IMG/VR virus record: IMGVR_UViG_3300043464_002284
Coordinates: 124,001-188,000 of that record
DNA: 64,000 bases
Strand: one strand, 5' to 3'
Of this stretch, positions 16,629 through 31,227 are shown piece after piece. Under the pieces are notes generated by a model. That model did no database searches. It was given only the letters and a program-made list of their open reading frames with translations, and was not told the origin of the DNA. Each line of letters opens with the position of its first letter. The stretch's first letter is position 1. The position numbers and the translations under genes were made by a program.

Positions 16629-16664
16629 AAACTAGCAGTCTCTGCCTACTAACTGACCAACCCC

Positions 16665-17223: not shown

Positions 17224-17273
17224 TTGTCCCGCCTAACCCTGGCGGGTCGGGCTGAGTGGGTATAGTCAGCCAG
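17224..17273 (+). repeat. 50-bp ungapped motif, copy 1 (divergent)
   Basis: TTGT..C..CTAA...GG..TGG...AGTCAGCCAG. Confidence 0.7.
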
Positions 17274-17539
17274 TAGTCGGGGCTTGACAAAGAGTCTTTA
17301 ATAGAGTATATTGGGCAGAAAGGGAGAGAATTATGTTGAATAATGATGAGCGTATGGCTGTTTGTGACTGTGTGGCTGATTTTTCTATTCGTCTGTTTCG
17401 TGCTGCTACTGTTGATGATCAAGCTGTTCATAATGAATTGGATATTTTTTATGAGTTCTTTTGTAGGGCTCTTGAGATTGCCAAGAGTGAGGGTGCGGTT
17501 AGGGTTCGTGAGTCTATTGGGGCTAGTAACAACTAATCG

Positions 17540-17617
17540 TAAGTCCTTATCCTTAAAGAACTTAGGGATAGGGCGGGCGGACGAATTTGATGTAAGTGCT
17601 TGTGTATCATAGGGTTA
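17540..17617. repeat. Double-palindrome element 11
   Basis: Starts 17540/17593. Confidence 0.9.
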
Positions 17618-17658
17618 TGTAAATGCTAAAAAATTTTTGGAATTCCTACAGAAGCCTC

Positions 17659-17687
17659 TTGACAAGTGACGATAATAGATGTATACT
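17659..17687 (+). promoter_or_regulatory. Sigma70 promoter upstream of the ncRNA cluster
   Basis: TTGACA-AGTGACGATAATAGATG-TATACT. Confidence 0.85.
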
Positions 17688-17695
17688 TAGCACAT

Positions 17696-18177
17696 AAGCA
17701 GATGAGGGCCGCTGGCAGAATGATATCAAAGAAGCCACGGTTAAATGCAAGGCCGAGTATGGCATAACCCAATCTGCTTTACAATACAAAACTCGTGGGT
17801 CCATGCCTTGGACTAGGTTGGGTAACTCATTACGATAAGCCCCGCATGTCGCGGCAGCGATGGGGCTGACAGTGCCGGTTACGCACTGGATAGTAGTGCC
17901 AATCTATGGGGGATCGCGTCCTCACCACGTTATAATACAATCAGTAATCGTTCCCAAGAGCCAGACAGATTGCTTCATGAACAATCTCAGGGAGGTTTCC
18001 GTGGACGGTTTCCACTAGTGTTTACCTGGCCCAAGGGTTAAAAATATCGGGTATTAGTGGAGTATAGAACCGGAGTCGTAAATGGTTCGCTGATTACAAA
18101 CAGGGGTCGGATAGAAACCAAGTTTACTGGCTGGGTTGGATAATGCGTGATACCGGACATTATTCGTAAAACTATCG
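17696..18177 (+). ncRNA. ORF-free multi-domain structured RNA (four domains)
   Basis: Closing stems AAGCAGAT/ATCTGCTT, CGTGG/CCACG, GTAATC/GATTAC, GATAG/CTATC, separated by AC-rich linkers. Confidence 0.65.
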
Positions 18178-18250
18178 CTGGATATAACTCAAATGGCAGA
18201 GTTCCACTCAGAGATGAGAGGAGTTACAGGTTCAAATCCTGTTATCTGGT
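18178..18250 (+). tRNA. tRNA-like RNA with non-canonical anticodon arm (GAGA tetraloop)
   Basis: Acceptor CTGGATA/TATCTGG, D arm ACTC/GAGT, T arm ACAGG-TTCAAAT-CCTGT; no 7-nt anticodon loop. Confidence 0.6.
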
Positions 18251-18474
18251 AAGTCGATCCATTAACAGCCGGTATACAATACAAAGGAGAAGAGATGACT
18301 AAAGAAGAATCAGACAGAAATGCGGCCATAGTTTATGTTCTTAGGGTTCTTAAAAACCCAATGATGATCAGGAGCCCTGCTAAAAAAGACGCATTGACTT
18401 TAGCAGAGCAGTATGGTATAACGGTGACTGATTTGATTAATGAGTACGAAAAGATAGTAATGAGGGTATAAAGT

Positions 18475-18702
18475 ATGAGATGGAATCCTAATGAGCCAAT
18501 TACTCCGGGATATTATCTGTGTGCTGCTGTTGGATATAATAGACCAATAATGCTCTGTTGGGATATTGACAATAAAGAATGGGGTGAATGGACTCATGGT
18601 GAGTATGATGATGGTATACTTCAATGGGAACCGTTTGATAAGTCTATCGTTAAATATCATATGGGACTGAATGAAATTTCTATGCCGGAGGGTTGGGTAT
18701 GA
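18475..18702 (+). CDS. Hypothetical Trp-rich protein
   Basis: ORF in plus-strand run. Confidence 0.55.
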   Translation: MRWNPNEPITPGYYLCAAVGYNRPIMLCWDIDNKEWGEWTHGEYDDGILQWEPFDKSIVKYHMGLNEISMPEGWV

Positions 18703-18993
18703 TCTACTTAAATATTAATGAGATCGAACGGTTGGCCGAAATTGTTGCTGAACTGGTTAAGTTGGATATGTGTGTGATTGCTGAGTTGAAGGGGACTAAG
18801 TGGAGTATTGAGGTAACTAAGGGATGAAAACTACAACGCTTGAGCTGACCAAAACCGAAATTAACTATTTGTATAATCTGGTATGTGAGAATATGGAGCG
18901 TGGAGAATATTGGGGAAATCAGAATCAGTTTATGAAGATGCAAGAACGTGTTTTTAATAAACTGATGGACTGCGAAACAGAGGTGGCATCCTA

Positions 18994-19248
18994 ATGGAAT
19001 GGATTAGTTTCCACGGGCCTCGTCGCCCTATTAATGGACAAAAGATCATCTATTATGGTGAGGCTATTGGTGTGTGGCGTGGAAAGTATAGGATAAACTA
19101 TACTGACCCTTTTTGTATTCACAATATTGATTGTAGTGAAGCTCCCGGCAATGTAGACTATATGGATGCTCCATACTGGCAACCCGATGAGGGGCAACCA
19201 AAACCACCACCACCAGAACAGCCCTACCCACCAGATTATCCTAGTTGA
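18994..19248 (+). CDS. Hypothetical protein with Pro-rich tail
   Basis: ORF ends at element 12. Confidence 0.6.
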   Translation: MEWISFHGPRRPINGQKIIYYGEAIGVWRGKYRINYTDPFCIHNIDCSEAPGNVDYMDAPYWQPDEGQPKPPPPEQPYPPDYPS

Positions 19249-19250
19249 CA

Positions 19251-19328
19251 TAAGTCCTTGCTGCTAAAGAACTTAGCTCAAGGGCGGGCGGCCGGTTTCG
19301 ACGTAAGTCCTTATCTCTAAAGACTTTA
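19251..19328. repeat. Double-palindrome element 12
   Basis: Starts 19251/19304. Confidence 0.9.
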
Positions 19329-19408
19329 CGATTAGCAATATTTTTTCAAGATTTCCTCTTGACTTGTCGATAATAGTAGTGTAAGATAGTGGTAACACGA
19401 AAGGGAAT

Positions 19409-19654
19409 ATGATGACTGTTGCTGAATTGATCGAAGAACTGAACAAGCTGCCCCAAGATATGCTTGTGCTTGTACCGGGTTATGAGGGTGGATACGACAA
19501 TATCGAAGTTCAGAGGAATGGGGCTGTTGTTCTGGACGATAATTGGGATGGACAAGAAAAGTTTTATTGGTATAATGGGCGACACGCAACGTACTACAAG
19601 GATATGGAAGGCGACGAGCCTACGTCCTGCGTCGTTATCGGGAGGGGAAAATGA
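19409..19654 (+). CDS. Phage hypothetical protein
   Basis: MTVAELIEELNKLPQD...GYEGG motif; promoter 19359-19387. Confidence 0.65.
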   Translation: MMTVAELIEELNKLPQDMLVLVPGYEGGYDNIEVQRNGAVVLDDNWDGQEKFYWYNGRHATYYKDMEGDEPTSCVVIGRGK

Positions 19655-20160
19655 AAACGGCAGAAAAACACGCCGAAGTACGATTTCATCTGCTCAATGG
19701 GCAAAACTATCGGAAATGGCAAGTAAATATTATGCAAGGGAAGAAGAGGGTTGACCAATTTTATGTCGATCCGGCCGAATACCAGTTAGAGATGCGTGGT
19801 TGCAAGCTGGTAAATAAGGTGGCTAGGGCAAAATGGGTCAATAAGAAACAGAAAAAGAATGTGAGTGGTTGGGTGCAGTGCGAGGAGGTTATGCTTCGCA
19901 AGGATTTTTATCCCTCTTTGCCTATTGACAATCTTGAGAAGTTGTATTATAATCCCATTCGTGATGTTCACTGGCGACGAGAGAGTGACGGTGGTGAATT
20001 TGTTTGGGATAACAGTGAATATGACACCTTAGTTACTGATGGACGACAGGTTCATATTCTGGAAGAACGTAACGGAAATTTTGACGGTATTTACGAGATC
20101 GACCCTAAATATACAGAAAGTTTTGGAATTTATGATCAAAATCGAACTGAGCGTGCGTGA
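19651..20160 (+). CDS. Hypothetical protein
   Basis: Overlaps the upstream ORF stop (ATGA coupling). Confidence 0.65.
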   Translation: MKTAEKHAEVRFHLLNGQNYRKWQVNIMQGKKRVDQFYVDPAEYQLEMRGCKLVNKVARAKWVNKKQKKNVSGWVQCEEVMLRKDFYPSLPIDNLEKLYYNPIRDVHWRRESDGGEFVWDNSEYDTLVTDGRQVHILEERNGNFDGIYEIDPKYTESFGIYDQNRTERA

Positions 20161-20503
20161 GTCGTTGAACATGATTGCAAATGGTTGCAGTCTCGATATG
20201 TTCGACAAGATTGTGACTTCGTTGGAAGTGGCATTGGGTGTGAACCAGCGTCGTAAGGTAACCATCACGGGTGGGATGACCACGGATAACCGTATCCGCT
20301 GCATCAAAGTCATCCGCGAACACACCGGATGGGGTTTGAAGGAGTCGAAGGATTGGACCGATGTTCTTGTTGGTCGCTACAACGAGAGCGGCTTTTGGAG
20401 TGGTGGTGGACACCCGAACACCATGACTCTGAAAACGCCGGAAGTGGCGGAGCAACTGCTGCGTGACCTGACCAGTCATGGTTGTGTGGGTTATCTCGTA
20501 TGA
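20132..20503 (+). CDS. Ribosomal protein bL12 (L7/L12) C-terminal-domain-like protein
   Basis: NRIRCIKVIREHTGWGLKESKDWTD matches the L12 CTD K-x-x-R-x-x-TGLGLKEAK signature. Confidence 0.7.
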   Translation: MIKIELSVRESLNMIANGCSLDMFDKIVTSLEVALGVNQRRKVTITGGMTTDNRIRCIKVIREHTGWGLKESKDWTDVLVGRYNESGFWSGGGHPNTMTLKTPEVAEQLLRDLTSHGCVGYLV

Positions 20504-20505
20504 CC

Positions 20506-20583
20506 TAAAGCCTTGTCCCTAAAGAACTTAGGGCGAGGCTGGGCGGCCGAATTTGATCTAAGTCCTTATCCCCAAACAACTTA
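20506..20583. repeat. Double-palindrome element 13
   Basis: Starts 20506/20559. Confidence 0.9.
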
Positions 20584-20786
20584 GGACAAAATCAAAAATC
20601 TTTGAGGCCCACTCAAGTTCCTGCTTGACAATGACGATACTATACTGTAGAATGAGAGTATCACAAGTCAAGACTCCGCGATGATGCCAACAAGAAAAAC
20701 CATCACGACGGACTTGACAAGTGGGTAACAGTAACGTATACTGATACTAGAACGATTGGAAACTGTAACATTTTTGGAGAAATGAA

Positions 20787-21047
20787 ATGAAGAAGTTTAG
20801 CTTTGCTGTTGATATTGTTGGCGACGAGATTGACTCTGCGGATGTGGTTGCTACGCTTACAAAGGCTCTGAACGATGAGCTTCCTGGTGATGTTCATGCG
20901 AATGTTAAGCCCGCTGGTATCAAGGCTTTTAGTGAACAGGGTTATAAGGTGTGGCGAGCTAGGGTTACTGGTGTGACTGCCGAGGCTGCGGGAGATGCCC
21001 ACGATGGCAAGGTAGAGAAGGAGACAGAAACCGAAACGGTTGCGTGA
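20787..21047 (+). CDS. Hypothetical protein
   Basis: GGAG RBS. Confidence 0.6.
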   Translation: MKKFSFAVDIVGDEIDSADVVATLTKALNDELPGDVHANVKPAGIKAFSEQGYKVWRARVTGVTAEAAGDAHDGKVEKETETETVA

Positions 21048-21062
21048 GTTAACAAAACTGGA

Positions 21063-21307
21063 CTATGCCAGTATAAAGGGCTAACGCCCCACCGATAAAT
21101 AGGTGAGATTTTAGGCATAGTGCGGCGGGGTCAAACCCGCGTAATGATAGTTCGTTGCAAGACTAAAAGGTGCAACTTAGAGGGTTTAACCAACCAGATA
21201 AGTCGGGTGGTTCCGTCGAAGTTATCGACCTCTAGAGTATATACTAATGACGATGGTAAGACGATAACGCCATCAAACCGTAATGCCTACATGGGACGCC
21301 ATGTGGG
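21063..21307 (+). ncRNA. Putative structured RNA upstream of tRNA-Arg
   Basis: Stems CTATGCC/GGCATAG, GCGGG/CCCGC, GTTGCA/TGCAAC, TAGAGG/CCTCTA, GATGG/CCATC, CCTACATGG/CCATGTGGG. Confidence 0.6.
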
Positions 21308-21344
21308 CTTGCGGCGTTGAGTGGGTACGATATAATAGAGAGAC

Positions 21345-21416
21345 GGCCCCATAGTTAAATGGATATAATAAGTGACTTCTAATCTCTAGTTGCAGGTTCG
21401 ATTCCTGCTGGGGCTA
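21345..21416 (+). tRNA. tRNA-Arg(TCT)
   Basis: Cloverleaf; loop CTTCTAA; T arm GCAGG-TTCGATT-CCTGC. Confidence 0.85.
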
Positions 21417-21421
21417 TTGTT

Positions 21422-21495
21422 GGGGGCGTAGATCAATTGGTTAGATCGCTAGCTTGTCACGCTAGAGGTTGCGGGTTCGAGTCCCGTCGCTCTCG
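21422..21495 (+). tRNA. tRNA-Asp(GTC)
   Basis: Cloverleaf; CTAGC-TTGTCAC-GCTAG. Confidence 0.92.
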
Positions 21496-21502
21496 TTTGT
21501 TG

Positions 21503-21580
21503 TAAACCCTTGCTACTAAAGCACTTAGAGCAAGTTCGCCGGGCCGGGGTCGTCGTAAGTCCTTATCTCACAAGGGTTTG
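21503..21580. repeat. Double-palindrome element 14 (directly after tRNA-Asp)
   Basis: Starts 21503/21556. Confidence 0.9.
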
Positions 21581-21660
21581 CATCAAGAATAATTTTGTGA
21601 AGTTTTTCGCTTGACGTTGCCGATACTATAGTGTAGAATCGGTAGACACAGGAGAAGAAC

Positions 21661-22365
21661 ATGAAAACTGCTGACGGTAATGATAAGTTGGGTAAGGGTT
21701 GTATTGTTGTGAGTCGTCCGGTTGGCGATACTTGCCCACCCGATTGCGATTATCTCGGAAACGGCTGCTATGCCGAAGCTACTGAAAACCAGTATAAAAA
21801 TGCTCGCACTGCCGGGTTTGCTAATATCATAACGGAAAAGAATAAAATCCGCTCTATGATTCTGGAAGCAAAGCGTCGTGAGAAGTCTATCCGTTGGCAT
21901 GAACGTGGCGACTGGTTTCTCAATGGCGAACTTGACCTAGACTATGTTGCGAATGTAACGTGGGCTTGTGAGAGTATTCTTGCCGATGGTGATACGTTGC
22001 CCGATATGTGGTTTTATACTCATATCTACGATTCTCGGCTTGTGAGTCTGGAAAAGTATATGAATGTATACGCTAGTGTGCATGATGATAACGATATGGG
22101 CGAAGCACTATCACAGGGTTTCAAGCTGTTCGCATGGTGTGACAGCGATATGAAGATTGCACCCAAGCGACCCAAGAGCAAGGCAAAGGCCGAAGCATGG
22201 CGACAAGCACTGCCGAAGCTGGTGGTTCTCAATGCGACAAAGTTTGTTGTGTGTCCAGAAATCCGTCGTGGTCGTTCGGAAATCACTTGCACTGGCACAA
22301 AAGATAGTATATCATGCGACTTGTGTGTGCGTGGTTTGGCTAATGTATTGTTTCCCGCACACTAA
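21661..22365 (+). CDS. Gp88-like Cys-motif phage protein
   Basis: TCPPDC...GCYA...IRWHERGD...FYTH pattern; C-terminal CP...C...C..C. Confidence 0.6.
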   Translation: MKTADGNDKLGKGCIVVSRPVGDTCPPDCDYLGNGCYAEATENQYKNARTAGFANIITEKNKIRSMILEAKRREKSIRWHERGDWFLNGELDLDYVANVTWACESILADGDTLPDMWFYTHIYDSRLVSLEKYMNVYASVHDDNDMGEALSQGFKLFAWCDSDMKIAPKRPKSKAKAEAWRQALPKLVVLNATKFVVCPEIRRGRSEITCTGTKDSISCDLCVRGLANVLFPAH

Positions 22366-22368
22366 ACC

Positions 22369-22446
22369 TAAGTCCTTGACCGTAAAGAACTTACGGCAAG
22401 GGCGAGCGGACGGATCGGTCGTAAGTCCTTGACTCATAAGACTTTA
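22369..22446. repeat. Double-palindrome element 15
   Basis: Starts 22369/22422. Confidence 0.9.
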
Positions 22447-22529
22447 GAGATTATTCAAGTTTCACTATTGCATTTGTCGATAAGATACTGTAGAATGGTG
22501 GAGTATCACCAACTTGGAAAGGGAAAGCT

Positions 22530-23096
22530 ATGAGCTATGTTGGATTGTATGATGACGCAGGAAGTAAGAACGCTTTCTACATTGTCAAAGATAAAAAGAT
22601 TGGCCGGAAGCGTGTGGGCTTCAAAGAGTTTGAAAATAAGCAAGAGGCAGAGTTTGCCCATCGGGTTCAAAAGCATCTGGCTCAGTTTGATTTGGCCCCT
22701 ATGGTATATGGGGATGTTGGTTTTATTCGTAGGCATGATGGTGAGTTGACTTGTTATGGTTATTTGACCGAAGTGGCTCGGCCTATGTCTGAATGTCATG
22801 ATGAAGATTGTGATGGTGAATGTTTTCGGAGCGAGTGTAAGAATGGTACTACTATCTCTGAACTAGTTTATGATTTGGGTGAACATGGCTTAGAGTATAA
22901 CGATGCCCATAAGGGTAATTTTGGTTATGTTCGACGTAAGGGTTCATGGGTTCCGGTTGCTATCGACCTTGGAATCGAGAGCTTTACTGATTGGGATGAA
23001 GATATTTATGGAAAGTTTGATTATGCTGCTGACGAGTTTGATGACTATGGACGATGCAATTGTGTTCAATGCAAAAAGTTCCGAGAGGAAGAATAA
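22530..23096 (+). CDS. Protein-kinase-like (ePK/APH fold) protein
   Basis: LAPMVYG, DAHKGNFG (HxxN), AIDLG (DxG); C-terminal CxCxxC. Confidence 0.6.
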   Translation: MSYVGLYDDAGSKNAFYIVKDKKIGRKRVGFKEFENKQEAEFAHRVQKHLAQFDLAPMVYGDVGFIRRHDGELTCYGYLTEVARPMSECHDEDCDGECFRSECKNGTTISELVYDLGEHGLEYNDAHKGNFGYVRRKGSWVPVAIDLGIESFTDWDEDIYGKFDYAADEFDDYGRCNCVQCKKFREEE

Positions 23097-23499
23097 TGAG
23101 CAAATACTATATCAAGTGTGGAACACTAGAATTAATTTATTCCTGCAACAAATGTCCACGGGATGCTGCGATGGATGCTATTTGGGAAACAAATGAAAAT
23201 GATACACTAGATGAGCATTTCTATATAGATGAGCGTGGATATAAAGACTATACAAATGCTGATGGATTAACTTGTGTGTTACATACTAGCCACATTCTAA
23301 AAGATGCCGGATGGAGTATTGAATAATGTGGACAAAAATAGACGATAAAAAAGTAAGACACTTATGGGAATGTGCTGATTGTGATAATCTAGTTTATGTT
23401 GAACCTTGGTTCTATTCCGAAAATGGCGAACCCTTTTGCACAAAGTGTGAGAGGGATATGGAGTATATTCGAACAGAAGTGGATATGTAACACTTTCCG

Positions 23500-23577
23500 C
23501 AAACCCTTGCTGCGTAAGCACTTAGGGTGAGCGGGGGCGGCCGGATTTGACGTAAGTTGTTGCAGGATGCGGACTTA
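23500..23577. repeat. Double-palindrome element 16
   Basis: Starts 23500/23553. Confidence 0.9.
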
Positions 23578-23615
23578 GAGAAATTCCAGAAAACTCCTAA
23601 AGTTTAGGGTGGTGA

Positions 23616-24029
23616 TTGGTCGATAATAAGGATATGAGAACGAGACGAGAATCAACAAGGGGTGAGAGAATGATCCAGTGGGTTGGGATTGTGATTACGA
23701 TTTTGGGTCTGGCGTATACGGGTGTGAAGGACTACCAGAAAGGGGACATAAAATTTCCCAAGATGCCTCAAAAACAGGTCTTGACAAAGGTAGTTTATCC
23801 GATACAATACTGTCTGATGGCTTACGATCCTAACATTGATAGAATTTTTTACCTACACGAAAATGGAATATGGTATGATTACGCTCCACAACAACGACGA
23901 TATTCGACCACGCCGCAACCATATCAAGCTCAAGGTGCGACCGCAGTGGCAGGTTCCTACGGGTCACAAGGAACACCGGCATACCGTTATGGACAATCGC
24001 CCCAAGCGTCAGCGAACCCGATCCGCTGA
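23616..24029 (+). CDS. Membrane-anchored hypothetical protein
   Basis: TM helix WVGIVITILGLAY. Confidence 0.55.
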   Translation: MVDNKDMRTRRESTRGERMIQWVGIVITILGLAYTGVKDYQKGDIKFPKMPQKQVLTKVVYPIQYCLMAYDPNIDRIFYLHENGIWYDYAPQQRRYSTTPQPYQAQGATAVAGSYGSQGTPAYRYGQSPQASANPIR

Positions 24030-24079
24030 AAATCGTAGGGCTTGCGAGAATGGGGACTATTGAGTATAATTAGTAGTAT

Positions 24080-24152
24080 GCCAGTGTAGCTCAGTCAGCA
24101 GAGCGTCAAATTTGTAATTTGAATGTCGCGGGTGCAACTCCTGCCACTGGCT
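24080..24152 (+). tRNA. tRNA-Thr(TGT)
   Basis: GCCAGTG/CACTGGC acceptor; TCAAA-TTTGTAA-TTTGA; atypical D and T loops. Confidence 0.8.
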
Positions 24153-24218
24153 TTATGAGTCGAAAGAAAAAACGTATGTAAACGCTCTATCTGGTGTATA
24201 TATTCGTATCCAGAGGAG

Positions 24219-24746: not shown

Positions 24747-24817
24747 TCCGGGATGGTGAAATGGTATCACAGCAGACTTTGGATCTGCGTTTCTACGTTC
24801 AAGTCGTAGTCCCGGAA
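24747..24817 (+). tRNA. tRNA-Gln(TTG)
   Basis: TCCGGGA/TCCCGGA; GCAGA-CTTTGGA-TCTGC. Confidence 0.9.
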
Positions 24818-24821
24818 TTAT

Positions 24822-24893
24822 TGGCGAGTAGCACAACGGTTGTGCAAGCGGCTGTTAACCGCTAGGTTACAGGTTCGAATCCTGTCTCGCCAG
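24822..24893 (+). tRNA. tRNA-Asn(GTT)
   Basis: TGGCGAG/CTCGCCA; AGCGG-CTGTTAA-CCGCT. Confidence 0.9.
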
Positions 24894-24898
24894 CTTGA

Positions 24899-24985
24899 GG
24901 AAGAATGGCAGAGTGGTCTAATGCATCTGATTACTAATCAGAAGAAGCGTAAAAACTTCCGTGGGTTCGAATCCTACTTCTTCCG
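24899..24985 (+). tRNA. tRNA-Ser(ACT)
   Basis: GGAAGAA/TTCTTCC, G73, long variable arm, TCTGA-TTACTAA-TCAGA. Confidence 0.85.
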
Positions 24986-24988
24986 CTC

Positions 24989-25070
24989 GGTAGATTACTC
25001 AAGTGGACAACGAGGGCAGACTGTAAATCTGCTGGCATTGCCTTCGCTGGTTCGAATCCAGCATCTACCA
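24989..25070 (+). tRNA. tRNA-Tyr(GTA)
   Basis: GGTAGAT/ATCTACC; GCAGA-CTGTAAA-TCTGC; long variable arm. Confidence 0.92.
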
Positions 25071-25071
25071 C

Positions 25072-25149
25072 TAAGTTGTTGGTATGAAAGGACTTAGGAC
25101 AAATTCGGCGGGCCGCGTTCGACGTAAGTGATTACAGAGTAACGACTTA
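25072..25149. repeat. Double-palindrome element 17 (directly after tRNA-Tyr)
   Basis: Starts 25072/25125. Confidence 0.9.
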
Positions 25150-25234
25150 GGATTTGTTTAAAGTTTGTTCTTGACAGCTGCCGATAACTAGTGTATGATT
25201 GCTAATCGGAGGCTGATGTTTGAGTTGCGAGTGC

Positions 25235-25306
25235 GGCCCCATAGTATAGTAGTTAGTACGCTGGCCTTTCACGCCGGAGACCTGGGAGCGTAACCCAGTG
25301 GGGTCA
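25235..25306 (+). tRNA. tRNA-Glu(TTC), atypical T loop
   Basis: GGCCCCA/TGGGGTC; CTGGC-CTTTCAC-GCCGG; T loop AGCGTAA. Confidence 0.75.
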
Positions 25307-25307
25307 T

Positions 25308-25357
25308 TTGTTTCTGCTAATCCTACGGATTTGGAAGTTGTGGAAGTAGTCAGCGAG
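25308..25357 (+). repeat. 50-bp ungapped motif, copy 2 (immediately after tRNA-Glu)
   Basis: TTGTTTCTGCTAATCCTACGGATTTGG...TAGTCAGCGAG. Confidence 0.85.
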
Positions 25358-25613
25358 AATTTCTAAACATTTGCCTCTTGACAAGCCGATAATGGTATGG
25401 TAGACTATTGGAATAAGAAAGGAACCTAAGATGAAGAACCTTCGCATCTATGATATTGTGACCGAGGACGGTCAAACCCTGGCTGACATTCAACTCTCTA
25501 TGCAAGAGGATTTTGATTGGGCTGATGTTTTTGATAAGCTCTATGATTTTACCACAGAAAACGTCCAAAGTTATTCCTACCAAGAAATTACCGTACAAAC
25601 TGAATAACTAGAT

Positions 25614-25686
25614 GGGCCTTTAGCTCAATTGGCAGAGCAAGGAGCTTTTAACTCTTAGGTTCGGGGTTCGAGTCCCCGAGGGCCCA
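25614..25686 (+). tRNA. tRNA-Lys(TTT)
   Basis: GGGCCTT/AGGGCCC; AGGAG-CTTTTAA-CTCTT. Confidence 0.92.
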
Positions 25687-25740
25687 CTTGACAATGGTTG
25701 GTTGTTGGTGTAGAATATGGGTAAGAAAGGGAGTAGAAAT

Positions 25741-25917
25741 ATGAGATATGAAGATTATTATGATGGCTACAACTATGACTATGATGAATTGGTAGAAAAT
25801 ACCGAGGATCTTGGTCTGGATGAAGAACCTTGGATGAATGATATTGAGGAAGAAGATGACGAGGTTCCATCTTACGGTAAGAATTATTATCCAAGTATTG
25901 AAGATGAAGATGAATAA
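25741..25917 (+). CDS. Very acidic small protein
   Basis: D/E/Y-rich; RBS GGGAG. Confidence 0.6.
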   Translation: MRYEDYYDGYNYDYDELVENTEDLGLDEEPWMNDIEEEDDEVPSYGKNYYPSIEDEDE

Positions 25918-25922
25918 TTTTT

Positions 25923-26003
25923 GTGTGTGCTTCTAGGTGGGACTAGAACCTTTTCTTTATTCCTTTCTTATAATGGGCTGTTGGTTCAAATCCAACCACA
26001 CAC
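25923..26003 (+). pseudogene. tRNA-like element with degenerate anticodon arm
   Basis: GTGTGTG/CACACAC acceptor; GTTGG-TTCAAAT-CCAAC T arm; TTCTAG/CTAGAA D-like arm; pyrimidine tract in place of the anticodon arm. Confidence 0.55.
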
Positions 26004-26006
26004 TTT

Positions 26007-26513
26007 ATGAACGCTTGGCAACAAGAGCTTGATGACTTCCGGCGTACCCCAGATGGTAAGATTATCCAAGGTGCTGCTCACACTAGCCGAGTATTAAATC
26101 ACAAATATCGGAATGGTGTGATTATCAAGGCTGTTTGTTCTCTGCGTAAAATTGAGAATAATTTCGATAGCATTGCTTGTTGTGGCGTAAGTGGTTTGAT
26201 GGTAGTGCCACAGATTGCAGAGATTCTCAATAAGAATATTATAGTTGTTCGTAAGGATGAAAAGCGATATAGCGAATTCTTTCTTGAGGGTGTCTCTCCG
26301 TCTCGATATATTATTGTAGATGATTTGATCTGTTCTGGAAATACTCTTAAGCATATTATTGCTAGTATTTCTGATGATACTCCAAGAGCAAAGTGTATCG
26401 GGGCGTACTTCTATCTCGGTGAGGAATGTTCTTTCAATGCTTCCACCGATTCTAAATTTTTTGAGAAGCAGTTTGGGACGATTATCCTAAACCCTTACCA
26501 GCCAAAGACTTAG
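26007..26513 (+). CDS. Type I phosphoribosyltransferase-family protein
   Basis: PRPP-binding motif IIVDDLICSGNT. Confidence 0.8.
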   Translation: MNAWQQELDDFRRTPDGKIIQGAAHTSRVLNHKYRNGVIIKAVCSLRKIENNFDSIACCGVSGLMVVPQIAEILNKNIIVVRKDEKRYSEFFLEGVSPSRYIIVDDLICSGNTLKHIIASISDDTPRAKCIGAYFYLGEECSFNASTDSKFFEKQFGTIILNPYQPKT

Positions 26514-26565
26514 GACGAATCCGGACGCCCCGGCCAGCCGTAAGTCCTTATCCTGAAACAACTTA
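26488..26565. repeat. Double-palindrome element 18 (core inverted; overlaps the PRTase 3' end)
   Basis: Starts 26488/26541. Confidence 0.9.
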
Positions 26566-26667
26566 CGACCTGCGGAATTTTTCCAAGGTTTTCGCTTGAC
26601 AGTGACGATAACATAGTGTAGAATCAGCGTATAAGAACGATTGAACAGCAACACGAAAGGGATGATT

Positions 26668-27618
26668 ATGGCTCATGCAGTTGAACAGATGATGTTTGTT
26701 GGTGCGACCCCGTGGCACGGTCTGGGCAACCAGCTCGACGAGGCTCCCACGGTTTCGGAGGCGATGACTGCCGCCGGTTTGGATTGGGAAGTTGGTCTGA
26801 AGGATTTGGTCACGGTGGACGGTCAACCAGTTCCGGCCCGTGCGACCTATCGCAAGACCGACGACAGTATTCTGGGCGTTGTCGGCCCGCGATACACTCC
26901 GCTGCAAAACAGCGAAGCGTTCGATTGGTTCCAGCCGTTTCTGGACGCTGGTGAGTGTGCGTTGCATACTGCCGGTTCGCTCCACAGCGGTCAGAAAGTT
27001 TGGGTTCTGGCCCAACTGAACCGCGACAATAGCGAGATCGTGAAGGGCGACGAGGTTGGGAAGTTTATTCTTCTCAGCAACTCGCACGATGGCACGACTG
27101 CTATCCGGGTTGGCTATACGCCGATCCGCGTTGTGTGTGCTAATACTATGGCAATGGCCCATAGCAAGAGCAGTGGTTCCAAGTTGATCCGTATTCGTCA
27201 CACACGTTCCAGCAAGACGAATCTGGAAAACGTGCGAGACATTATGGACAACATCAACATGGAGTTTGAGGCGACTGCGGAGCAATTCAAGTTCCTCGCG
27301 TCGAAGAACTTCAATCAGGCCGACGTTCGTCGCTATGTCAAGGTGATGCTCGACATCGACGGTACGCCGGACGATCAGATCAAGACTCGTACCAGAAACA
27401 TCATGGACGAGATTCTGAATCTGGTCGAAGGCCCGAAGCAGAGTGCTACGGGCGTTCGCGGAACGTGGTGGGCCGCTTATAACGGCTTCAACGAGTATCT
27501 GAATTACAACAAGGGTCGCACCGAAGATAATCGGCTCGACAGTCTGTGGTTCGGATCGAACGCGAATGACAACACCAAGGCTCTGGAAAAGGCCATGCAG
27601 TTCGCTCAGGCACTCTAA
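26668..27618 (+). CDS. DUF932 family phage/plasmid-like protein
   Basis: TPWHGLG...AGLDWEV...YTPLQN...TAGSL..GQKVW...LLSNSHDG...TPIRVVCANT...RHT...W.AYN...EY. Confidence 0.9.
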   Translation: MAHAVEQMMFVGATPWHGLGNQLDEAPTVSEAMTAAGLDWEVGLKDLVTVDGQPVPARATYRKTDDSILGVVGPRYTPLQNSEAFDWFQPFLDAGECALHTAGSLHSGQKVWVLAQLNRDNSEIVKGDEVGKFILLSNSHDGTTAIRVGYTPIRVVCANTMAMAHSKSSGSKLIRIRHTRSSKTNLENVRDIMDNINMEFEATAEQFKFLASKNFNQADVRRYVKVMLDIDGTPDDQIKTRTRNIMDEILNLVEGPKQSATGVRGTWWAAYNGFNEYLNYNKGRTEDNRLDSLWFGSNANDNTKALEKAMQFAQAL

Positions 27619-27642
27619 TACCTCGTAGTGGGGGTAATGTGG

Positions 27643-27677
27643 GAGCCGCCACTCAGCAATGGGTGGCGGTTCTTTTT
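27643..27677 (+). terminator. Strong intrinsic terminator
   Basis: GAGCCGCCACTCA-GCAA-TGGGTGGCGGTTC followed by T5. Confidence 0.9.
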
Positions 27678-27696
27678 ACTCCTAGACCACTTGACG

Positions 27697-27774
27697 TAAA
27701 CCCTTATCTGACAAGGACTTACGACAAGGCGGGGCGCCCGAAATTTCTCTAAGTTATTTGATACCAACGACTTA
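27697..27774. repeat. Double-palindrome element 19
   Basis: Starts 27697/27750; further solo palindromes at 27799, 27850, 28013 and 28562. Confidence 0.9.
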
Positions 27775-27929
27775 CGTCAATTTAGTAAAAGAATCTCGTA
27801 AGCCCAGTGTTGCCAACGGGTTGGGATGTCGATATACTGTATGTGGACGTAAGTGATTGAGTGGCAAGGGGTTAGGTTAAAATAGTAATAGAATTGTAAT
27901 AATGGATTGTATATTTTACCAGCCCTTTT

Positions 27930-27979
27930 TTGTCTCGCCTAATCCAGCGGATTTGCTGCCGTTGCTGTTAGTCAGCGAG
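27930..27979 (+). repeat. 50-bp ungapped motif, copy 3
   Basis: TTGTCTCGCCTAATCCAGCGGATTTGC...TAGTCAGCGAG. Confidence 0.85.
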
Positions 27980-28181
27980 AATATTCACTATAATAACACG
28001 AGCCTCTGTTCCTAAGTTCTTATGTTTCAACCACTTGCGACAAGTCTTGGGGTGTGGTATACTAAACAGTGTAACAACGATAGTAACAAAACGACTAATA
28101 GTTGAGATTTATTCTCAATAGATAAAGTTAGTTAGATTTTGTTGTATAATCTTATAGTCAGGCAAAAACTGGGAGCCCTTT

Positions 28182-28397
28182 GTGATGCAGAAAGAAAAAA
28201 TTATTGTAACTGATGAAAATCGACAGGATATTACTAACATCTATTGTCACAGACTTTTGGATGACATGGACTTTAATACTCTGTGGACTTTTGCTTATGA
28301 TATGTTGAGAGATAATAAAGCGGGTTTGACTAATAAAATGTTGGAAGATCAAATCTCTGACTACTACCCTGATATTCTGGAGAACCAATGGAAATAG
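28182..28397 (+). CDS. Hypothetical protein (paralog of 29254-29511)
   Basis: NR.DI...Y...L..DF...LE.QI....PD.L shared. Confidence 0.55.
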   Translation: MMQKEKIIVTDENRQDITNIYCHRLLDDMDFNTLWTFAYDMLRDNKAGLTNKMLEDQISDYYPDILENQWK

Positions 28398-29031
28398 ATA
28401 TTACAAAACAAGAAGCCTGGAAACTAATAGATGCTATCAAGGCATATATGAAGGACTATACTGTTACGGGAGCAGTTCATAAAACGTTCGACAATATTAC
28501 TAAAAAACTAAAGGAGGTTGTCAAAGAATAGTAACTGGTGGTGAGAGACCGGTTAGTATTGTAAGTTGTTTGTTCTCAAGGCTTTGCGTCAACAGAGCCG
28601 ATATGGTATACTAGGACGGTGGCGTGAGTGGTCAACTTTTCTCTTTCTAAGGAATTCTTATGCTAGGCCTAATCTTTGGTAGTTGTGTTGTTTTTGGACT
28701 TATCCAAGGTTTTAGCAGCAAGTAAGATTTTATGAATAATAATCAGACTATTCGGGTCGTTACCATACAAATGGAATTGGCTATACCAAATGATGATTGT
28801 ACTTGTCTAGATAGAGATGACATCTGCAATTATCTAAATAATAAACTGTATGAGGACCCTGAATTTTTTGGTGAGTTTGGCCCTGAGAATATTGTAAAGG
28901 TAGCCTCACTAGAATCATAGATACTATCTATTGTAGTATACCCTTCTCTAACTTCTTAACTCTTATTTATCATACGCACCTGCATAATACATATTCTTTT
29001 CTCTGGGGTGTGTCAAGAAATAAAAATCTTA

Positions 29032-29081
29032 TTGTCCAATCTAATCCTTCGGATTTGGCGGTCATGGCGATAGTCAGCGAG
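29032..29081 (+). repeat. 50-bp ungapped motif, copy 4
   Basis: TTGTCCAATCTAATCCTTCGGATTTGG...TAGTCAGCGAG. Confidence 0.85.
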
Positions 29082-29253
29082 TAATGAGGGGTCAGTTAAC
29101 AAACCAATAAGAAGTTATGTTTGGTCCTTCAACCTCCTTCTGGTATAATACAAGAGTCAACGGAGCCAGTAGTCAAGCATGTGGTGAGACAGATGCGGGA
29201 CTAAGGGAATCATGGGCAAAAGTGTTTTTAACTTTTAAACCATGAGGTGATTT

Positions 29254-29511
29254 ATGAAAAGTAGATTTATAGGTTCGGATAATCGAGTCGAGATTCAAAG
29301 AAAGTATATTGATCAGATCTTGGGTGAATTAGATTTCATGCAGATCAAAGATCGATTAAGAGATTATCTGACCAAGGAAAAGGATAAAGAATCTAACTAT
29401 GCTTTGGAAGCTGAGATACGAAAAGAAGCTCCAGATGTTTTAGTAGATAATTGGGATAGTTCAGATGGGCCAACTACCTTGATAGAGGAAGAAGGGTATC
29501 ATCATGCTTAA
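29254..29511 (+). CDS. Hypothetical protein (paralog of 28182-28397)
   Basis: GAGGTG RBS; shared motif. Confidence 0.6.
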   Translation: MKSRFIGSDNRVEIQRKYIDQILGELDFMQIKDRLRDYLTKEKDKESNYALEAEIRKEAPDVLVDNWDSSDGPTTLIEEEGYHHA

Positions 29512-29909
29512 AACTTTCCACAGAATAATTTCTTTTGAAGTAGAGGGTGAAATTTATGATAGCTCTACTACTCCAGAGAGTATTCTAAAAAGCTATGACT
29601 GGCACTTTAAAGGATTTCATGACAATCATGAGGACAAATGTTTCTTAGAATCATCTCATGATAACAGTCATGGACGCATTACTAAAATTGTGCGAAAGAA
29701 TAAGATCAGTAAAACTGACAAAGCAGATACAGAAACTTTCACAATTAATAATAGGTGACTTATGAATTATACATTAGTTTATTGGAGCGTTGGAACACTA
29801 GTAACATTGTTAGCATTAGTGTCATTATACTATTTCTCTTGTCGCTGTTCTCCTCCAGCTATTAAATAGTAAATAATAGTAATTTGGTATTAATTTAATC
29901 CGGTGAGGT

Positions 29910-29959
29910 TAGTCTCGGCTAATCTCCCGGATTTGGCTTTAGTGGTAATAGTCAGCGAG
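29910..29959 (+). repeat. 50-bp ungapped motif, copy 5
   Basis: TAGTCTCGGCTAATCTCCCGGATTTGG...TAGTCAGCGAG. Confidence 0.85.
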
Positions 29960-30077
29960 TTAGTGGGGTCAGTTAAAAAAGAGTATATCGGTGGAACTTG
30001 CCTCCTAGTCCGCATAGCCTATTATAGGTCAAATGACAGTCGCAGGGACGCGACATTACTTCAACAGGAGAAAGTTT

Positions 30078-30293
30078 ATGATTAAGTTTGTTCTTGTGTT
30101 TGCTCTAATGGTTCTTGGTTCGTCAACCTATGCTGGTGAGTGTGCTAGTGGACATTGTACTCTACGAAGTCGAGTTGTCAATGTTACACAAGAAATTGTT
30201 GCTGTTCCAGTAGCAGTTACACGCCGAACAGTTGAGGCTACTCGTAATGTTGGTCGAAGAACTGTAGCTCGCGTTCGCAGCGTTGTTCGTTAA
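30078..30293 (+). CDS. Small secreted protein (planctomycete-like)
   Basis: Signal peptide, ECASGHC, Arg/Val-rich tail. Confidence 0.6.
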   Translation: MIKFVLVFALMVLGSSTYAGECASGHCTLRSRVVNVTQEIVAVPVAVTRRTVEATRNVGRRTVARVRSVVR

Positions 30294-30441
30294 TATTCAT
30301 GGTCGATAATCAAAAGGATCATAGGACAGATTTGTTTGATTATAGGTCATAAAGAAAAGATAACCCCCGATGCCTCTTAGCAATGCACACTTTCGGGGGT
30401 CTTTTCTTAAAATAGGACTAACTTTATTCAAGGAGGAATTT

Positions 30442-30786
30442 ATGAAAGTTTTCATGATGGTATTTGCAATTTGTTTTTGTACTATGTTTGCCGCATCGGC
30501 TGCTGGGCCAAAGTATTATTACTCTCAGCCAACAAGGGTTGAAAGTTATGCTAATAATTACTCTGGTGGAGATGACCAAAGTCGATGTCAAGCCGAAGCT
30601 AATCATATGGCAGCTAATAACATTACTGGTCATGTGTGGGGAGTTATTGGTAGTTTTGAAGGAGTAGGTTATGGTTCTAGTCCCAATTGTAACACTTGTA
30701 CTCCAGGTAACAATATGAGACTAACAGGAGATGCGTCAGCACAAGGTCGCAATGGTAAATGGTATAGAGTAAGGTCTTGGAGATAA
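30442..30786 (+). CDS. Small secreted Cys-containing protein (minimal CAP-like, planctomycete-like)
   Basis: Signal peptide; EANHMA...GH...FEGVGYG...GDASAQG..GKWY...W. Confidence 0.5.
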   Translation: MKVFMMVFAICFCTMFAASAAGPKYYYSQPTRVESYANNYSGGDDQSRCQAEANHMAANNITGHVWGVIGSFEGVGYGSSPNCNTCTPGNNMRLTGDASAQGRNGKWYRVRSWR

Positions 30787-30795
30787 TATCTTCAG

Positions 30796-30868
30796 GCAAG
30801 AGTAGCTCAATTGGCAGAGCGTCAGGTTTCCAACCTGAATGTTGAGGGTTCGATTCCCTTCTCTTGCT
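30796..30868 (+). tRNA. tRNA-Gly(TCC)
   Basis: GCAAGAG/CTCTTGC; TCAGG-TTTCCAA-CCTGA. Confidence 0.92.
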
Positions 30869-30883
30869 TTTAATAGTAACAGA

Positions 30884-30933
30884 TTGTATCAGCTAATAGT
30901 ATCGGGTTGGTTTTTATGGTAACAGTCAGCGAG
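30884..30933 (+). repeat. 50-bp ungapped motif, copy 6 (15 nt after tRNA-Gly)
   Basis: TTGTATCAGCTAATAGTATCGGGTTGG...CAGTCAGCGAG. Confidence 0.8.
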
Positions 30934-31177
30934 ATTTAGTATGATAACAACTATAAAAATTCAACCCCAAATGGACTGTAATTACATTTGTCAAAGAATT
31001 CACCAAGCTATCCTCCAATATCAAAAGGATAACCAGAACGTAAACGATACTATGCTAGTGATAGATATTCGTAAACCTTATGACGATGATAATCTTATCT
31101 CCAAGTTAGAATTTAAGGAAGAATAAACTTGCTAAAGTAGTCAGGCGCTTTTATAATACCATTGAGATACTCTGTAT

Positions 31178-31227
31178 ATGTCTCACCTAAAATTCCGGGT
31201 TTGGAATTTATGGAAACAGTCAGCGAG
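31178..31227 (+). repeat. 50-bp ungapped motif, copy 7
   Basis: ATGTCTCACCTAAAATTCCGGGTTTGG...CAGTCAGCGAG. Confidence 0.8.

What the first reader, a model, noticed from the sequence alone, without database searches (positions are those of the whole stretch)
17224..31227. Second repeat family: seven ungapped, co-oriented 50-bp motifs
Seen at 17224, 25308, 27930, 29032, 29910, 30884 and 31178. All align without gaps: TTGT-N5-CTAA-N6-(C/G)G(G/A)..T(T)GG-N6-TGG-N3-(T/C)AGTCAGCGAG, with invariant G3 T4, C10-A13, G21, T24, G26, T34 G35, A41-C47 and A49 G50. Two sit right after tRNA genes (Glu, Gly); copies 4 and 5 share a further GGGGTCAGTTAA. Five cluster in the ORF-poor 27.9-31.2 kb stretch. Inference: a long asymmetric site for one large protein (replication initiator/iteron, packaging or nicking site, recombinase att-like site) or a small ssDNA/RNA motif (weak CTCG/CGAG and ATCC/GGAT pairing).
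Basis: partly seen in the sequence, partly recalled or inferred. Interest (0 to 1): 0.75.

Follow-up and report, generated by a model that had tools for sequence, protein, structure and literature searches.

The report
Phage intergenic junction repeat element
A roughly 50-base sequence repeated seven times, always in the same direction, between the small early genes and tRNA genes of an uncultured 238-kb lake phage is a real, clade-wide element at gene-unit boundaries; it most likely ends one transcript and leads into the next gene, but an odd pair of always-matching triplets inside it is unexplained.

Summary
Seven ungapped, co-oriented 50-nt copies lie at the stated coordinates. They are the only copies in the 237,915-bp phage genome (profile E 1e-9 to 1e-14).

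The motif is clade-wide. There are 266 copies in 829 kb of related lake-phage contigs. Five complete relatives carry 6-8 copies each, on one strand, within 13-17 kb. It is absent from bacterial genomes and matches no Rfam family.

It is always intergenic: after tRNAs, after ORF ends (sometimes supplying the stop codon) or after terminators. Downstream lies either a strong sigma70 promoter (37%) or a start codon 3-20 nt away (30%, peak 5-8 nt), where its terminal GAG looks like a Shine-Dalgarno.

In the copy-5 class, an upstream arm closes the conserved CTAATCC...GGATT segment into a 17-bp covarying hairpin followed by a U-rich tract. A metatranscriptome contig ends 7 nt after that stem.

The motif is also a discrete indel unit, forms tandem arrays, and its centre is swapped between copies.

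Best reading (0.4): a transcribed junction cassette, combining terminator or 3' hairpin with a ribosome-binding-site leader, analogous to PeSL and SAS/ESAS elements.

Two things are unexplained: triplets 27-29 and 36-38 are identical, and conservation recurs every 10.5 nt, which favours a rival DNA-binding-site reading.

The parts
17224..17273 (+). Copy 1 (triplets GGC/GGT). The upstream ORF reads into it and stops at its TAA (positions 11-13). A sigma70 promoter starts 10 nt after it, with its -35 at 17284.
25308..25357 (+). Copy 2 (GAA/GAA). It starts 1 nt after tRNA-Glu and is followed by the promoter at 25378-25406. The same site is empty in four relatives.
27930..27979 (+). Copy 3 (CTG/CTG), followed by a hairpin of the other repeat family and a promoter at 28035.
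28099..28161 (+). Diverged long variant with the same ends (TAGT ... TATAGTCAG) and a two-hairpin interior in the relatives. Orthologous copies occur in at least six related loci.
29032..29081 (+). Copy 4 (GCG/GCG). GGGGTCAGTTAA follows at 29088-29099. The next promoter is TTGGTC at 29121-29126 with TATAAT at 29144-29149.
29897..29912 (+). Upstream left arm (AATCCGGTGAGGTTAG). It pairs with motif positions 10-24 of copy 5 to form a long hairpin.
29910..29959 (+). Copy 5 (GCT/GTA). It is the right arm of a terminator-like hairpin followed by UUUGGCUUU. A metatranscriptome contig ends at 29940, motif position 31.
30884..30933 (+). Copy 6 (GTT/GTA). It starts 14 nt after tRNA-Gly. The ATG of a 61-aa ORF lies 7 nt after its end.
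31178..31227 (+). Copy 7 (GAA/GAA). It lies in a 5' UTR downstream of the promoter at 31129-31157. The ATG at 31234 is 6 nt after its end.
25235..25306 (+). tRNA-Glu, whose 3' end abuts copy 2. Thirteen related copies start 0-1 nt after a tRNA-Glu.
30795..30869 (+). tRNA-Gly upstream of copy 6.

Best explanation
The motif is a clade-specific, transcribed junction cassette of the phage's early/tRNA region. It acts mainly in cis on RNA and has three parts.

1. The conserved CTAATCC...GGATT segment is one arm of a stem-loop. Where a complementary upstream arm is present (28% of contexts, including copy 5), it forms a 15-17-bp hairpin followed by a U-rich tract. That is a Rho-independent terminator or 3'-end hairpin. 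Elsewhere only a 5-bp mini-hairpin remains.
2. A fixed pair of 9-nt units follows, TG-xyz ... TG-xyz.
3. An invariant YAGUCAG box follows. Its variable tail is an SD-like GAG wherever the next start codon lies 5-8 nt away.

The cassette therefore closes the upstream unit, through stop codons in two frames and a hairpin. It then leads into the next unit, either as a ribosome-binding-site leader or by sitting 10-13 nt before the next sigma70 promoter.

Because it is repeated, it is also where homologous recombination duplicates, deletes and exchanges cassettes.

Shown: anatomy, contexts, indels, the hairpin of the copy-5 class, and transcription into copy 5. Inferred: the termination or 3'-end function of the other classes, SD use, and a trans-acting factor reading YAGUCAG and the TG-xyz pair.
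For: Orientation:
- Copies are strictly co-oriented with transcription. tRNAs in the loci lie 522 to 0 on the motif strand.
- Five complete relatives carry 6-8 copies each on one strand.

Context (always intergenic):
- 13 copies start 0-1 nt after tRNA-Glu.
- 15-18 upstream ORFs stop at the motif's TAA.
- Some copies follow intrinsic terminators.
- Of 199 unique downstream contexts, 73 have a strong sigma70 promoter and 59 have an ORF start within 3-20 nt, peaking at 5-8 nt.
- GAG at positions 48-50 is enriched when an ATG follows within 3-10 nt: 29 of 41 against 65 of 158, odds ratio 3.5, p = 8e-4.

Copy-5 class hairpin:
- RNAalifold predicts a 17-pair hairpin at -18.5 kcal/mol, with two compensatory pairs and many G-U pairs, followed by UUUGGUUUU.
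- Copy 5 with its flanks folds at -27.8 kcal/mol, z = -3.7.

Transcription:
- RNA contigs from two metatranscriptome runs begin at 29164/29165, just downstream of the sigma70 -10 at 29144-29149.
- One contig runs through three ORFs and ends at 29940, 7 nt after the stem.

Strand bias and selection:
- In the mini-hairpin, G-U outnumbers A-C 76 to 25.
- At orthologous sites the motif is more conserved than its flanks when flanks have diverged: 92% against 83%.

Published analogues exist: PeSL (PMC4122927) and SAS/ESAS (PMC3203893).
Against: - The 50-mers are no more structured than shuffles (mean z -0.12), and RNAalifold finds no consensus fold for the family.
- 72% of contexts lack the long hairpin, and the 5-bp mini-hairpin cannot terminate transcription by itself.
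- Conservation recurs every 10.5 nt (0 of 2000 permutations). This fits one face of duplex DNA better than RNA.
- Some copies lie after strong terminators, where little RNA is expected.
- The element is dispensable at the tRNA-Glu site.
- The RNA evidence is assembled contigs of a roughly 93%-identical relative. The 3' end could be an assembly break at the variable centre.
- GAG is a weak SD.
- Nothing in this model explains the identical triplets or the invariance of AGTCAG.
Confidence: 0.4

Rival explanations
1. It is a double-stranded DNA site for a phage or host DNA-binding protein or oligomer. The protein contacts one face of the helix over about 4.5 turns, for example as a polar transcription roadblock, an insulator or an early-gene shut-off operator (stoperator-like), or as a nucleoprotein scaffold.
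For: - Conserved blocks are centred near positions 3.5, 11.5, 24, 34.5 and 43.5. Fourier analysis peaks at 10.5 nt: amplitude 12.7 against 4.1, with 0 of 2000 permutations as high.
- There is no general RNA fold.
- The -35 of the next promoter sits at a fixed +61 to +63 in many contexts.
- Copies occur after terminators.
- TG direct repeats lie 9 bp apart.
Against: - 30% of copies have no promoter downstream and sit 5-8 nt before a start codon inside operons.
- Distance to promoters is otherwise variable.
- G-U exceeds A-C in the hairpin, and the copy-5 class has a covarying RNA-type hairpin.
- A roadblock would stop RNA polymerase upstream of the site, not at motif position 31.
- The permutation test ignores that conserved positions come in blocks.
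- A single protein does not explain variable but matching triplets.
Confidence: 0.22
2. It is a non-autonomous mobile or selfish miniature repeat (MITE/REP-like). It spreads and is lost as a unit, is tolerated only in the plastic early region, and is kept uniform by gene conversion rather than by a function for the phage.
For: - It is a discrete indel. At the tRNA-Glu site it is present in the window, L017 and L033 but absent in L070, L030, L076 and L036, with both flanks conserved.
- It replaces the 3' 174 nt of an ORF in L043.
- It forms tandem arrays with 64-nt and 50-nt periods, and is doubled at orthologous sites.
- Its centre is swapped between identical flanks.
- It is absent from bacterial genomes.
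Against: - No transposase or recombinase family was found.
- There are no terminal inverted repeats, no target-site duplication and no preferred target.
- Copy number is stable at 6-8, and sites with their types are orthologous across genomes whose flanks are only 70-90% identical.
- Ten positions are invariant in about 180 unique copies.
- The 3' tail is adapted to context.
Confidence: 0.15
3. It is an abundant RNA decoy or sponge, or an anti-defence mimic, carried on strong early and tRNA transcripts. It would titrate a host RNA-binding protein or nuclease, as pseudo-ToxI or RNA anti-CRISPR repeats do.
For: - Several dispensable copies sit on highly expressed early units.
- Some relatives have tandem amplification, with three identical 64-nt units in L074.
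- The centre evolves faster than the flanks in close relatives: 85% against 97.6% identity.
Against: - It has no similarity to any Rfam family, including ToxI-type and CRISPR-repeat-like models.
- It has no stable fold.
- Copies are mostly dispersed at junctions rather than arrayed.
- No partner is known.
Confidence: 0.1
4. It is a promoter for the phage-encoded sigma factor (window 452-1150, - strand). GGATT would serve as the -35, and AGTC 16 nt downstream as the -10.
For: - The phage encodes a Sigma70_r2 protein.
- The spacing of GGATT-N16-AGTC resembles ECF-type promoters. This comparison rests on my own knowledge.
- Every copy is followed by a co-oriented gene.
Against: - RNA contigs start at the sigma70 transcription start site (29164/29165), not after copy 4, and nothing was laid downstream of copy 5.
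- The motif is absent upstream of all structural (late) operons.
- The presumed spacer carries conserved TG dinucleotides.
- 5' UTRs would be only 2-7 nt long.
Confidence: 0.05
5. It is a replication origin or iteron, a packaging site, a nicking site or a recombinase att site.
For: Only that it is an asymmetric repeated site confined to one region.
Against: - Copies are scattered over 14 kb at unrelated gene junctions.
- No recombinase is detectable.
- GC skew follows gene orientation and shows no switch in the region.
- Individual copies are dispensable.
Confidence: 0.03

Closest known systems
PeSL elements (promoter-early stem-loops) of T4-like phages (Arbiol 2010; Comeau 2014, PMC4122927)
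   Same: - Both are short conserved intergenic cassettes concentrated in the hyperplastic early region.
- Both have a stem-loop upstream of a sigma70 promoter, then an SD and a start codon.
- Both sit at indel and replacement boundaries and can occur in tandem or degraded ('1/2') forms.
- This phage also has a more classical PeSL-like family: a CGTAAGTCC...ACTTACG hairpin, a T-rich UP-like stretch and a promoter.
   Different: - The 50-nt motif contains no promoter.
- Its conservation is far stricter than the signals alone would need (invariant AGTCAG, GT, A13, T24).
- 30% of copies lie inside operons directly before a start codon.
- Alignment breakpoints are only 1.6-fold enriched at the copies.
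- It has an internal matched-triplet repeat that PeSLs lack.
Start-associated sequences and extended SAS (SAS/ESAS) of Cluster K mycobacteriophages (Pope 2011, PMC3203893)
   Same: - Both are clade-specific conserved motifs, all in one orientation, lying a few bases upstream of start codons.
- ESAS adds an upstream imperfect inverted repeat with a variable spacer.
- Both are conserved at orthologous genes, occasionally missing completely from a site, and of unknown function.
   Different: - The sequences are unrelated.
- SAS is tied to start codons, whereas most copies here precede promoters or follow tRNAs.
- The motif here has a direct repeat, not an inverted one, in its variable part.
Stoperators of mycobacteriophage L5 / Cluster A (own knowledge)
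   Same: Both are many asymmetric sites in short intergenic spaces, in one orientation relative to transcription.
   Different: - Stoperators are 13-14 bp, number 20-30 or more across the genome, and are bound by the prophage repressor.
- This phage shows no integrase, and no repressor has been identified.
- The site here is 47-50 nt long and confined to 14 kb.
REP/BIME and MITE-type miniature repeats (own knowledge)
   Same: Both are short, intergenic, multi-copy repeats with presence/absence polymorphism and a small hairpin.
   Different: - There is no RAYT/Y1 transposase.
- There are no terminal inverted repeats or target-site duplications.
- The orientation is single.
- Copy number is low and stable, and sites are orthologous.
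Intercistronic processing or antitermination signals of phage early operons (T7 RNase III sites, lambda nut sites; own knowledge)
   Same: Both are orientation-specific repeated RNA signals between early cistrons, combining a hairpin with conserved single-stranded boxes.
   Different: - There is no long double-stranded RNA for RNase III.
- There is no boxA/boxB similarity.
- Neither cleavage nor antitermination has been shown.

Membership tests
Any Rfam RNA family | Covariance-model match at the gathering score or a low E-value | tested here: not met
   The gathering-score scan of the window finds only tRNAs and a tmRNA. An E <= 10 scan of 27800-31400 finds nothing on any copy.
PeSL (promoter-early stem-loop) | A stem-loop immediately upstream of a sigma70-type promoter inside the repeated unit | tested here: not met
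   The motif itself holds no -35/-10 pair. A strong promoter follows within 120 nt in only 73 of 199 contexts.
PeSL (promoter-early stem-loop) | Located in the hyperplastic early region and at indel or replacement boundaries between close relatives | tested here: met
   - Copies are confined to a 13-17 kb early/tRNA region in six genomes.
- There are empty sites, doubled sites and ORF-end replacements.
- A cassette is replaced between copies 4 and 5 in L070.
- The overall enrichment of breakpoints at the copies is only 1.6-fold.
SAS/ESAS-like start-associated element | A conserved motif 3-8 nt upstream of start codons, in one orientation | tested here: inconclusive
   This is met for about 30% of contexts, with a peak at 5-8 nt and GAG enrichment. 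It is not met for the majority.
Rho-independent terminator | A G+C-containing stem of at least 5-8 bp followed by a U-tract, with an RNA 3' end 7-9 nt after the stem | tested here: inconclusive
   This is met for the copy-5 class: a 17-bp covarying hairpin, UUUGGUUUU, and a contig end 7 nt after the stem. Only 56 of 199 contexts form a hairpin of 8 bp or more. The remainder have a 5-bp stem.
Structured cis-regulatory RNA or riboswitch | A conserved secondary structure supported by compensatory changes across the family | tested here: not met
   RNAalifold gives no structure on either strand. Mean MFE z is -0.12. Only the 5-bp hairpin shows weak covariation.
Protein-coding segment or leader peptide | An open frame with a start codon and 3-nt periodicity of conservation | tested here: not met
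   - There is no 3-nt periodicity.
- TAA is invariant in frame 2 and TAG is usual in frame 1.
- Frame 3 has TGA, TAG or TAA in several types and no start.
Mobile element with its own or a trans enzyme (IS200/605-REP, integron attC, IS110, DDE) | A cognate recombinase or transposase in the genome | tested here: not met
   PF01797, PF00589, PF00239, PF00665 and PF01548 all give 0 hits in the complete genome, while the control genomes do score.
Mobile element | Terminal inverted repeats or a target-site duplication at filled versus empty sites | tested here: not met
   The filled/empty alignment at tRNA-Glu shows a clean indel of about 50-57 nt with at most a 1-nt T ambiguity. No copies lie on the minus strand.
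Replication iterons, origin or pac site | Clustered at a single locus with a skew switch, or near the genome ends | tested here: not met
   Median spacing is about 1 kb at different gene junctions. GC skew follows transcription.
Double-stranded DNA protein-binding site | Helical (about 10.5-bp) periodicity of the conserved contacts | tested here: met
   The Fourier peak is at 10.5 nt, with 0 of 2000 permutations as high. Binding itself cannot be tested with these tools.

The most novel reading that the evidence does not exclude
The two always-matching, locus-specific triplets (positions 27-29 and 36-38, each after TG) are a programmable specifier. One trans-acting reader would read both, for example a nucleic-acid guide, a tRNA end or anticodon, or a polymerase that realigns between the repeats. 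On this reading the family would be a new class of phage cis element whose copies carry individual 'addresses' that are exchanged by patch conversion.
Probability: 0.1. Interest if true: 0.85.

Novelty: new variant of a known kind. Interest (0 to 1): 0.5.

Why it matters
Large uncultured lake phages carry long regions of tiny early genes whose regulation and rapid turnover are poorly understood. This element marks the boundaries of such units in at least 60 contigs.

It combines features of two published but mechanistically unsolved classes, PeSL and SAS/ESAS. It comes with an unusually rich comparative data set: 266 copies, empty and doubled sites, and subclass-specific hairpins.

If it is a terminator and ribosome-binding-site junction cassette, it shows how phages keep expression signals intact while shuffling accessory genes.

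The matched-triplet rule is a clean, testable anomaly. Identity covariation normally signals a shared pairing partner or templated copying, and no such partner was found.

Tried and rejected
- Rfam at gathering score and at E <= 10: no family.
- RNAalifold on 7 and on 83 copies, both strands, several flank lengths: no structure.
- CTCG/CGAG closing helix: not supported.
- A complement of the repeated 5-mer within +-100 nt or in the 5' half: no enrichment, apart from a weak z of 2.4-3.6 for positions 10-19.
- Link between the triplet and the adjacent tRNA's anticodon (T-box-like). It fits copy 2, where GAA lies next to tRNA-Glu. The same site carries GTG/GCG in other genomes, so it was rejected.
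- Coding, leader-peptide or ribosome-hopping readings: no 3-nt periodicity, in-frame stops and no start.
- Copy-number (phase) variation of the 9-nt unit: none, the spacing is fixed at 26 or 25 nt.
- Host origin: 31 pattern hits in 596 Gb is about the chance expectation. Only 7 freshwater MAG contigs, of inconsistent taxonomy and probably mis-binned phage, score with the profile.
- Cultured relatives: none. The best DNA polymerase match is 33% identical.
- Recombinase and transposase searches: negative.
- Alignment breakpoints at the motifs: only 4.7% against 2.9% expected.
- RNA runs: a second search listed none. Only Logan contigs of two metatranscriptomes could be laid, so there are no read-level ends.

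Full report
**1. Observation**

They align without gaps and show exactly the invariant columns listed.

The window is bases 124001-188000 of a 237,915-bp IMG/VR virus from lake water. A profile HMM built from relatives finds the seven copies (E 4e-9 to 7e-14) and nothing else in the genome on either strand. The bare hexamer AGTCAG is equally common on both strands. The repeat is therefore real and far beyond chance.

**2. Distribution**

- An IUPAC pattern scan of IMG/VR returned 99 loci. The profile finds 266 copies in those 829 kb.
- Five complete relatives (200-244 kb) carry 6-8 copies each, on one strand, within 13-17 kb. The reversed-pattern control gives zero.
- A scan of 596 Gb of prokaryote genomes gave about the chance number of pattern hits. 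Only seven freshwater MAG contigs of inconsistent taxonomy score with the profile, and these are probably mis-binned phage.
- No Rfam family matches.
- No cultured phage is close. The best DnaE-type polymerase match is 33% identical.

**3. Anatomy**

After the search was relaxed, 150 aligned copies keep G3, T4, A13, T24 and A41-G46 invariant. C10, T11, A12, G21, G26, T34 and G35 are above 90%. The last four bases vary. The distance from CTAA to YAGTCAG is 26 nt in 232 copies and 25 nt in 22.

Hairpin and overall fold:
- A 5-bp hairpin (12-16 with 20-24) is 79.9% paired, against 77.0% in shuffles. Compensatory change is modest, mainly U14-A22 to C-G.
- G-U outnumbers A-C 76 to 25 in it. That points to the + strand as the folded strand.
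- The 50-mers as a whole are not structured (mean z -0.12).
- RNAalifold gives no family-wide fold.

Periodicity:
- Conservation has no 3-nt periodicity.
- It has a strong 10.5-nt periodicity, with 0 of 2000 permutations as high.

**4. The anomaly**

The strongest covariation is identity, not complementarity.
- Position 27 equals 36 in 89% of copies (59% expected).
- Position 28 equals 37 in 81% (29% expected, all four bases used).
- Position 29 equals 38 in 69% (28% expected).
- Positions 30 and 39 are unrelated.

At least 13 different identical triplets occur.

Evidence from near-identical genomes:
- One pair differs by a coordinated change at positions 28 and 37.
- Other pairs differ by a whole 7-nt patch.

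In close relatives the centre changes faster than the flanks. I found no complementary partner and no coding explanation. This remains unexplained.

**5. Context**

The motif is always intergenic and always co-oriented with the tRNAs (522 to 0).

Upstream of it lie:
- a tRNA 3' end, with 13 copies 0-1 nt after tRNA-Glu;
- an ORF that stops at the motif's TAA (15-18 cases), including one case where the motif replaces 174 nt of an ORF's 3' end;
- or a terminator.

Downstream, among 199 unique contexts:
- 73 have a strong sigma70 promoter, with the -35 typically at +61 to +63;
- 59 have an ORF start within 3-20 nt, peaking at 5-8 nt;
- 33 have a weak promoter;
- 9 have another copy.

GAG at 48-50 is associated with an adjacent ATG (odds ratio 3.5, p = 8e-4). 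This fits use as a Shine-Dalgarno.

**6. A terminator subclass**

In 56 of 199 contexts, the upstream flank pairs with motif positions 10-25. This is enriched in copies that begin TAGT.

For the copy-5 class:
- Fifteen sequences fold into a 17-pair consensus hairpin (-18.5 kcal/mol), with two compensatory pairs and many G-U pairs, followed by UUUGGUUUU.
- Copy 5 with its flanks folds at -27.8 kcal/mol, z = -3.7.

Contigs from two lake metatranscriptome runs, from a relative about 93% identical, were laid on the window.
- They begin at 29164/29165, just downstream of the TGnTATAAT at 29141-29149.
- One runs through three small ORFs and ends at 29940, 7 nt after the stem.

Copy 5 is therefore transcribed as a 3' UTR and behaves like a Rho-independent terminator. 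The motif after copy 4 is not the promoter of that operon. These are assembled contigs, so the ends are suggestive only.

**7. Dynamics**

- The tRNA-Glu site is filled in many genomes and empty in four, with both flanks conserved and no target duplication.
- Orthologous sites are sometimes doubled.
- Tandem arrays of 64-nt and 50-nt period exist.
- A cassette between copies 4 and 5 is replaced in L070.
- Breakpoints are only 1.6-fold enriched at the motifs overall.
- No recombinase or transposase family is detectable. Turnover is therefore most simply explained by homologous and illegitimate recombination.

**8. Interpretation**

All contexts share one thing: the element sits between two expression units.

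The reading that covers most observations is a transcribed junction cassette. It ends the upstream unit through stops and a hairpin, which is a full terminator when the left arm is present. It leads into the next unit either as a ribosome-binding-site leader or by lying just upstream of a promoter. As a dispersed repeat, it doubles as a recombination substrate.

This is the logic of PeSLs in T4-like phages and resembles SAS/ESAS of Cluster K mycobacteriophages. This phage also has a more classical PeSL-like family.

I hold this reading at 0.4 for three reasons:
- Most copies lack a terminator-grade hairpin.
- The 10.5-nt periodicity favours a duplex-DNA protein site (rival, 0.22).
- The invariant AGTCAG and the matched triplets imply an unidentified trans factor.

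The remaining rivals are less likely:
- selfish miniature repeat, 0.15;
- RNA decoy, 0.10;
- promoter for the phage sigma factor, 0.05;
- origin, packaging or att site, 0.03.

**9. Novelty**

This is a new variant of a known kind, namely phage intergenic regulatory or junction repeats. It is not in Rfam and is confined to an uncultured lake jumbo-phage clade. Its internal identity rule has no precedent that I know of.

Noticed in passing
window 9400-28100, e.g. 16710-16802, 21550-21639, 25100-25199, 26530-26624: This is another, more classical PeSL-like repeat family. It has a hairpin (CGTAAGTCCTTAT ... ACTTACG), then a T-rich UP-like stretch (aatttttc.aaagttttcgc), then a near-consensus sigma70 promoter (TTGACA-N17-TAgAAT).
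   Followed up: partly
window 28099-28161: A long variant of the motif has the same ends (TAGT ... TATAGTCAG) but a different interior. In relatives such as L041 7140-7205 the interior forms two hairpins (-17.5 kcal/mol, z -2.6). The ends, not the interior, therefore define the family.
   Followed up: partly
window 52964-53318 (+): The phage encodes a full-length tmRNA (Rfam 91.5 bits), together with 13-14 tRNAs spread over 18-62 kb.
   Followed up: no
window 452-1150 (-): A phage-encoded sigma factor (Sigma70_r2, 232 aa) sits at the divergent switch between the leftward structural genes and the rightward early genes. Its promoters were not identified.
   Followed up: partly
genome 81201-100883 (-), outside the window (L110): A single 6560-aa ORF has a PhageMin_Tail (tape-measure) domain near its N-terminus. 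If it is a tape measure, it implies an extraordinarily long tail. Neighbouring ORFs of 2591, 2232 and 1833 aa have no Pfam match.
   Followed up: no
window 30364-30400 (+): There is a near-threshold match to the abiF RNA motif (34 bits against a gathering score of 37, E = 0.0014). It lies at the start of a 138-aa ORF that has no Pfam family.
   Followed up: no
window 18178-18250 (+) and 24899-24986 (+): Rfam calls a weak tRNA (37.8 bits) that ARAGORN does not report. ARAGORN reports a tRNA-Ser with the unusual anticodon ACT.
   Followed up: no
genome 130-155 kb (window about 6000-31000): The early/tRNA region is a G+C-rich island, at 41-44% against 32-37% elsewhere in the genome.
   Followed up: no
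genome 41507-43372 and 44294-45913 (L102): The DnaE-type (Pol III alpha-like) DNA polymerase is split into two ORFs about 900 nt apart.
   Followed up: no
L074 1394-1585 and 8380-8590; L047 8147-8246; L089 6149-6246: Some relatives carry the motif as head-to-tail arrays. One array has three nearly identical 64-nt units, and others have 49-50-nt periods, with no ORF between the units.
   Followed up: partly
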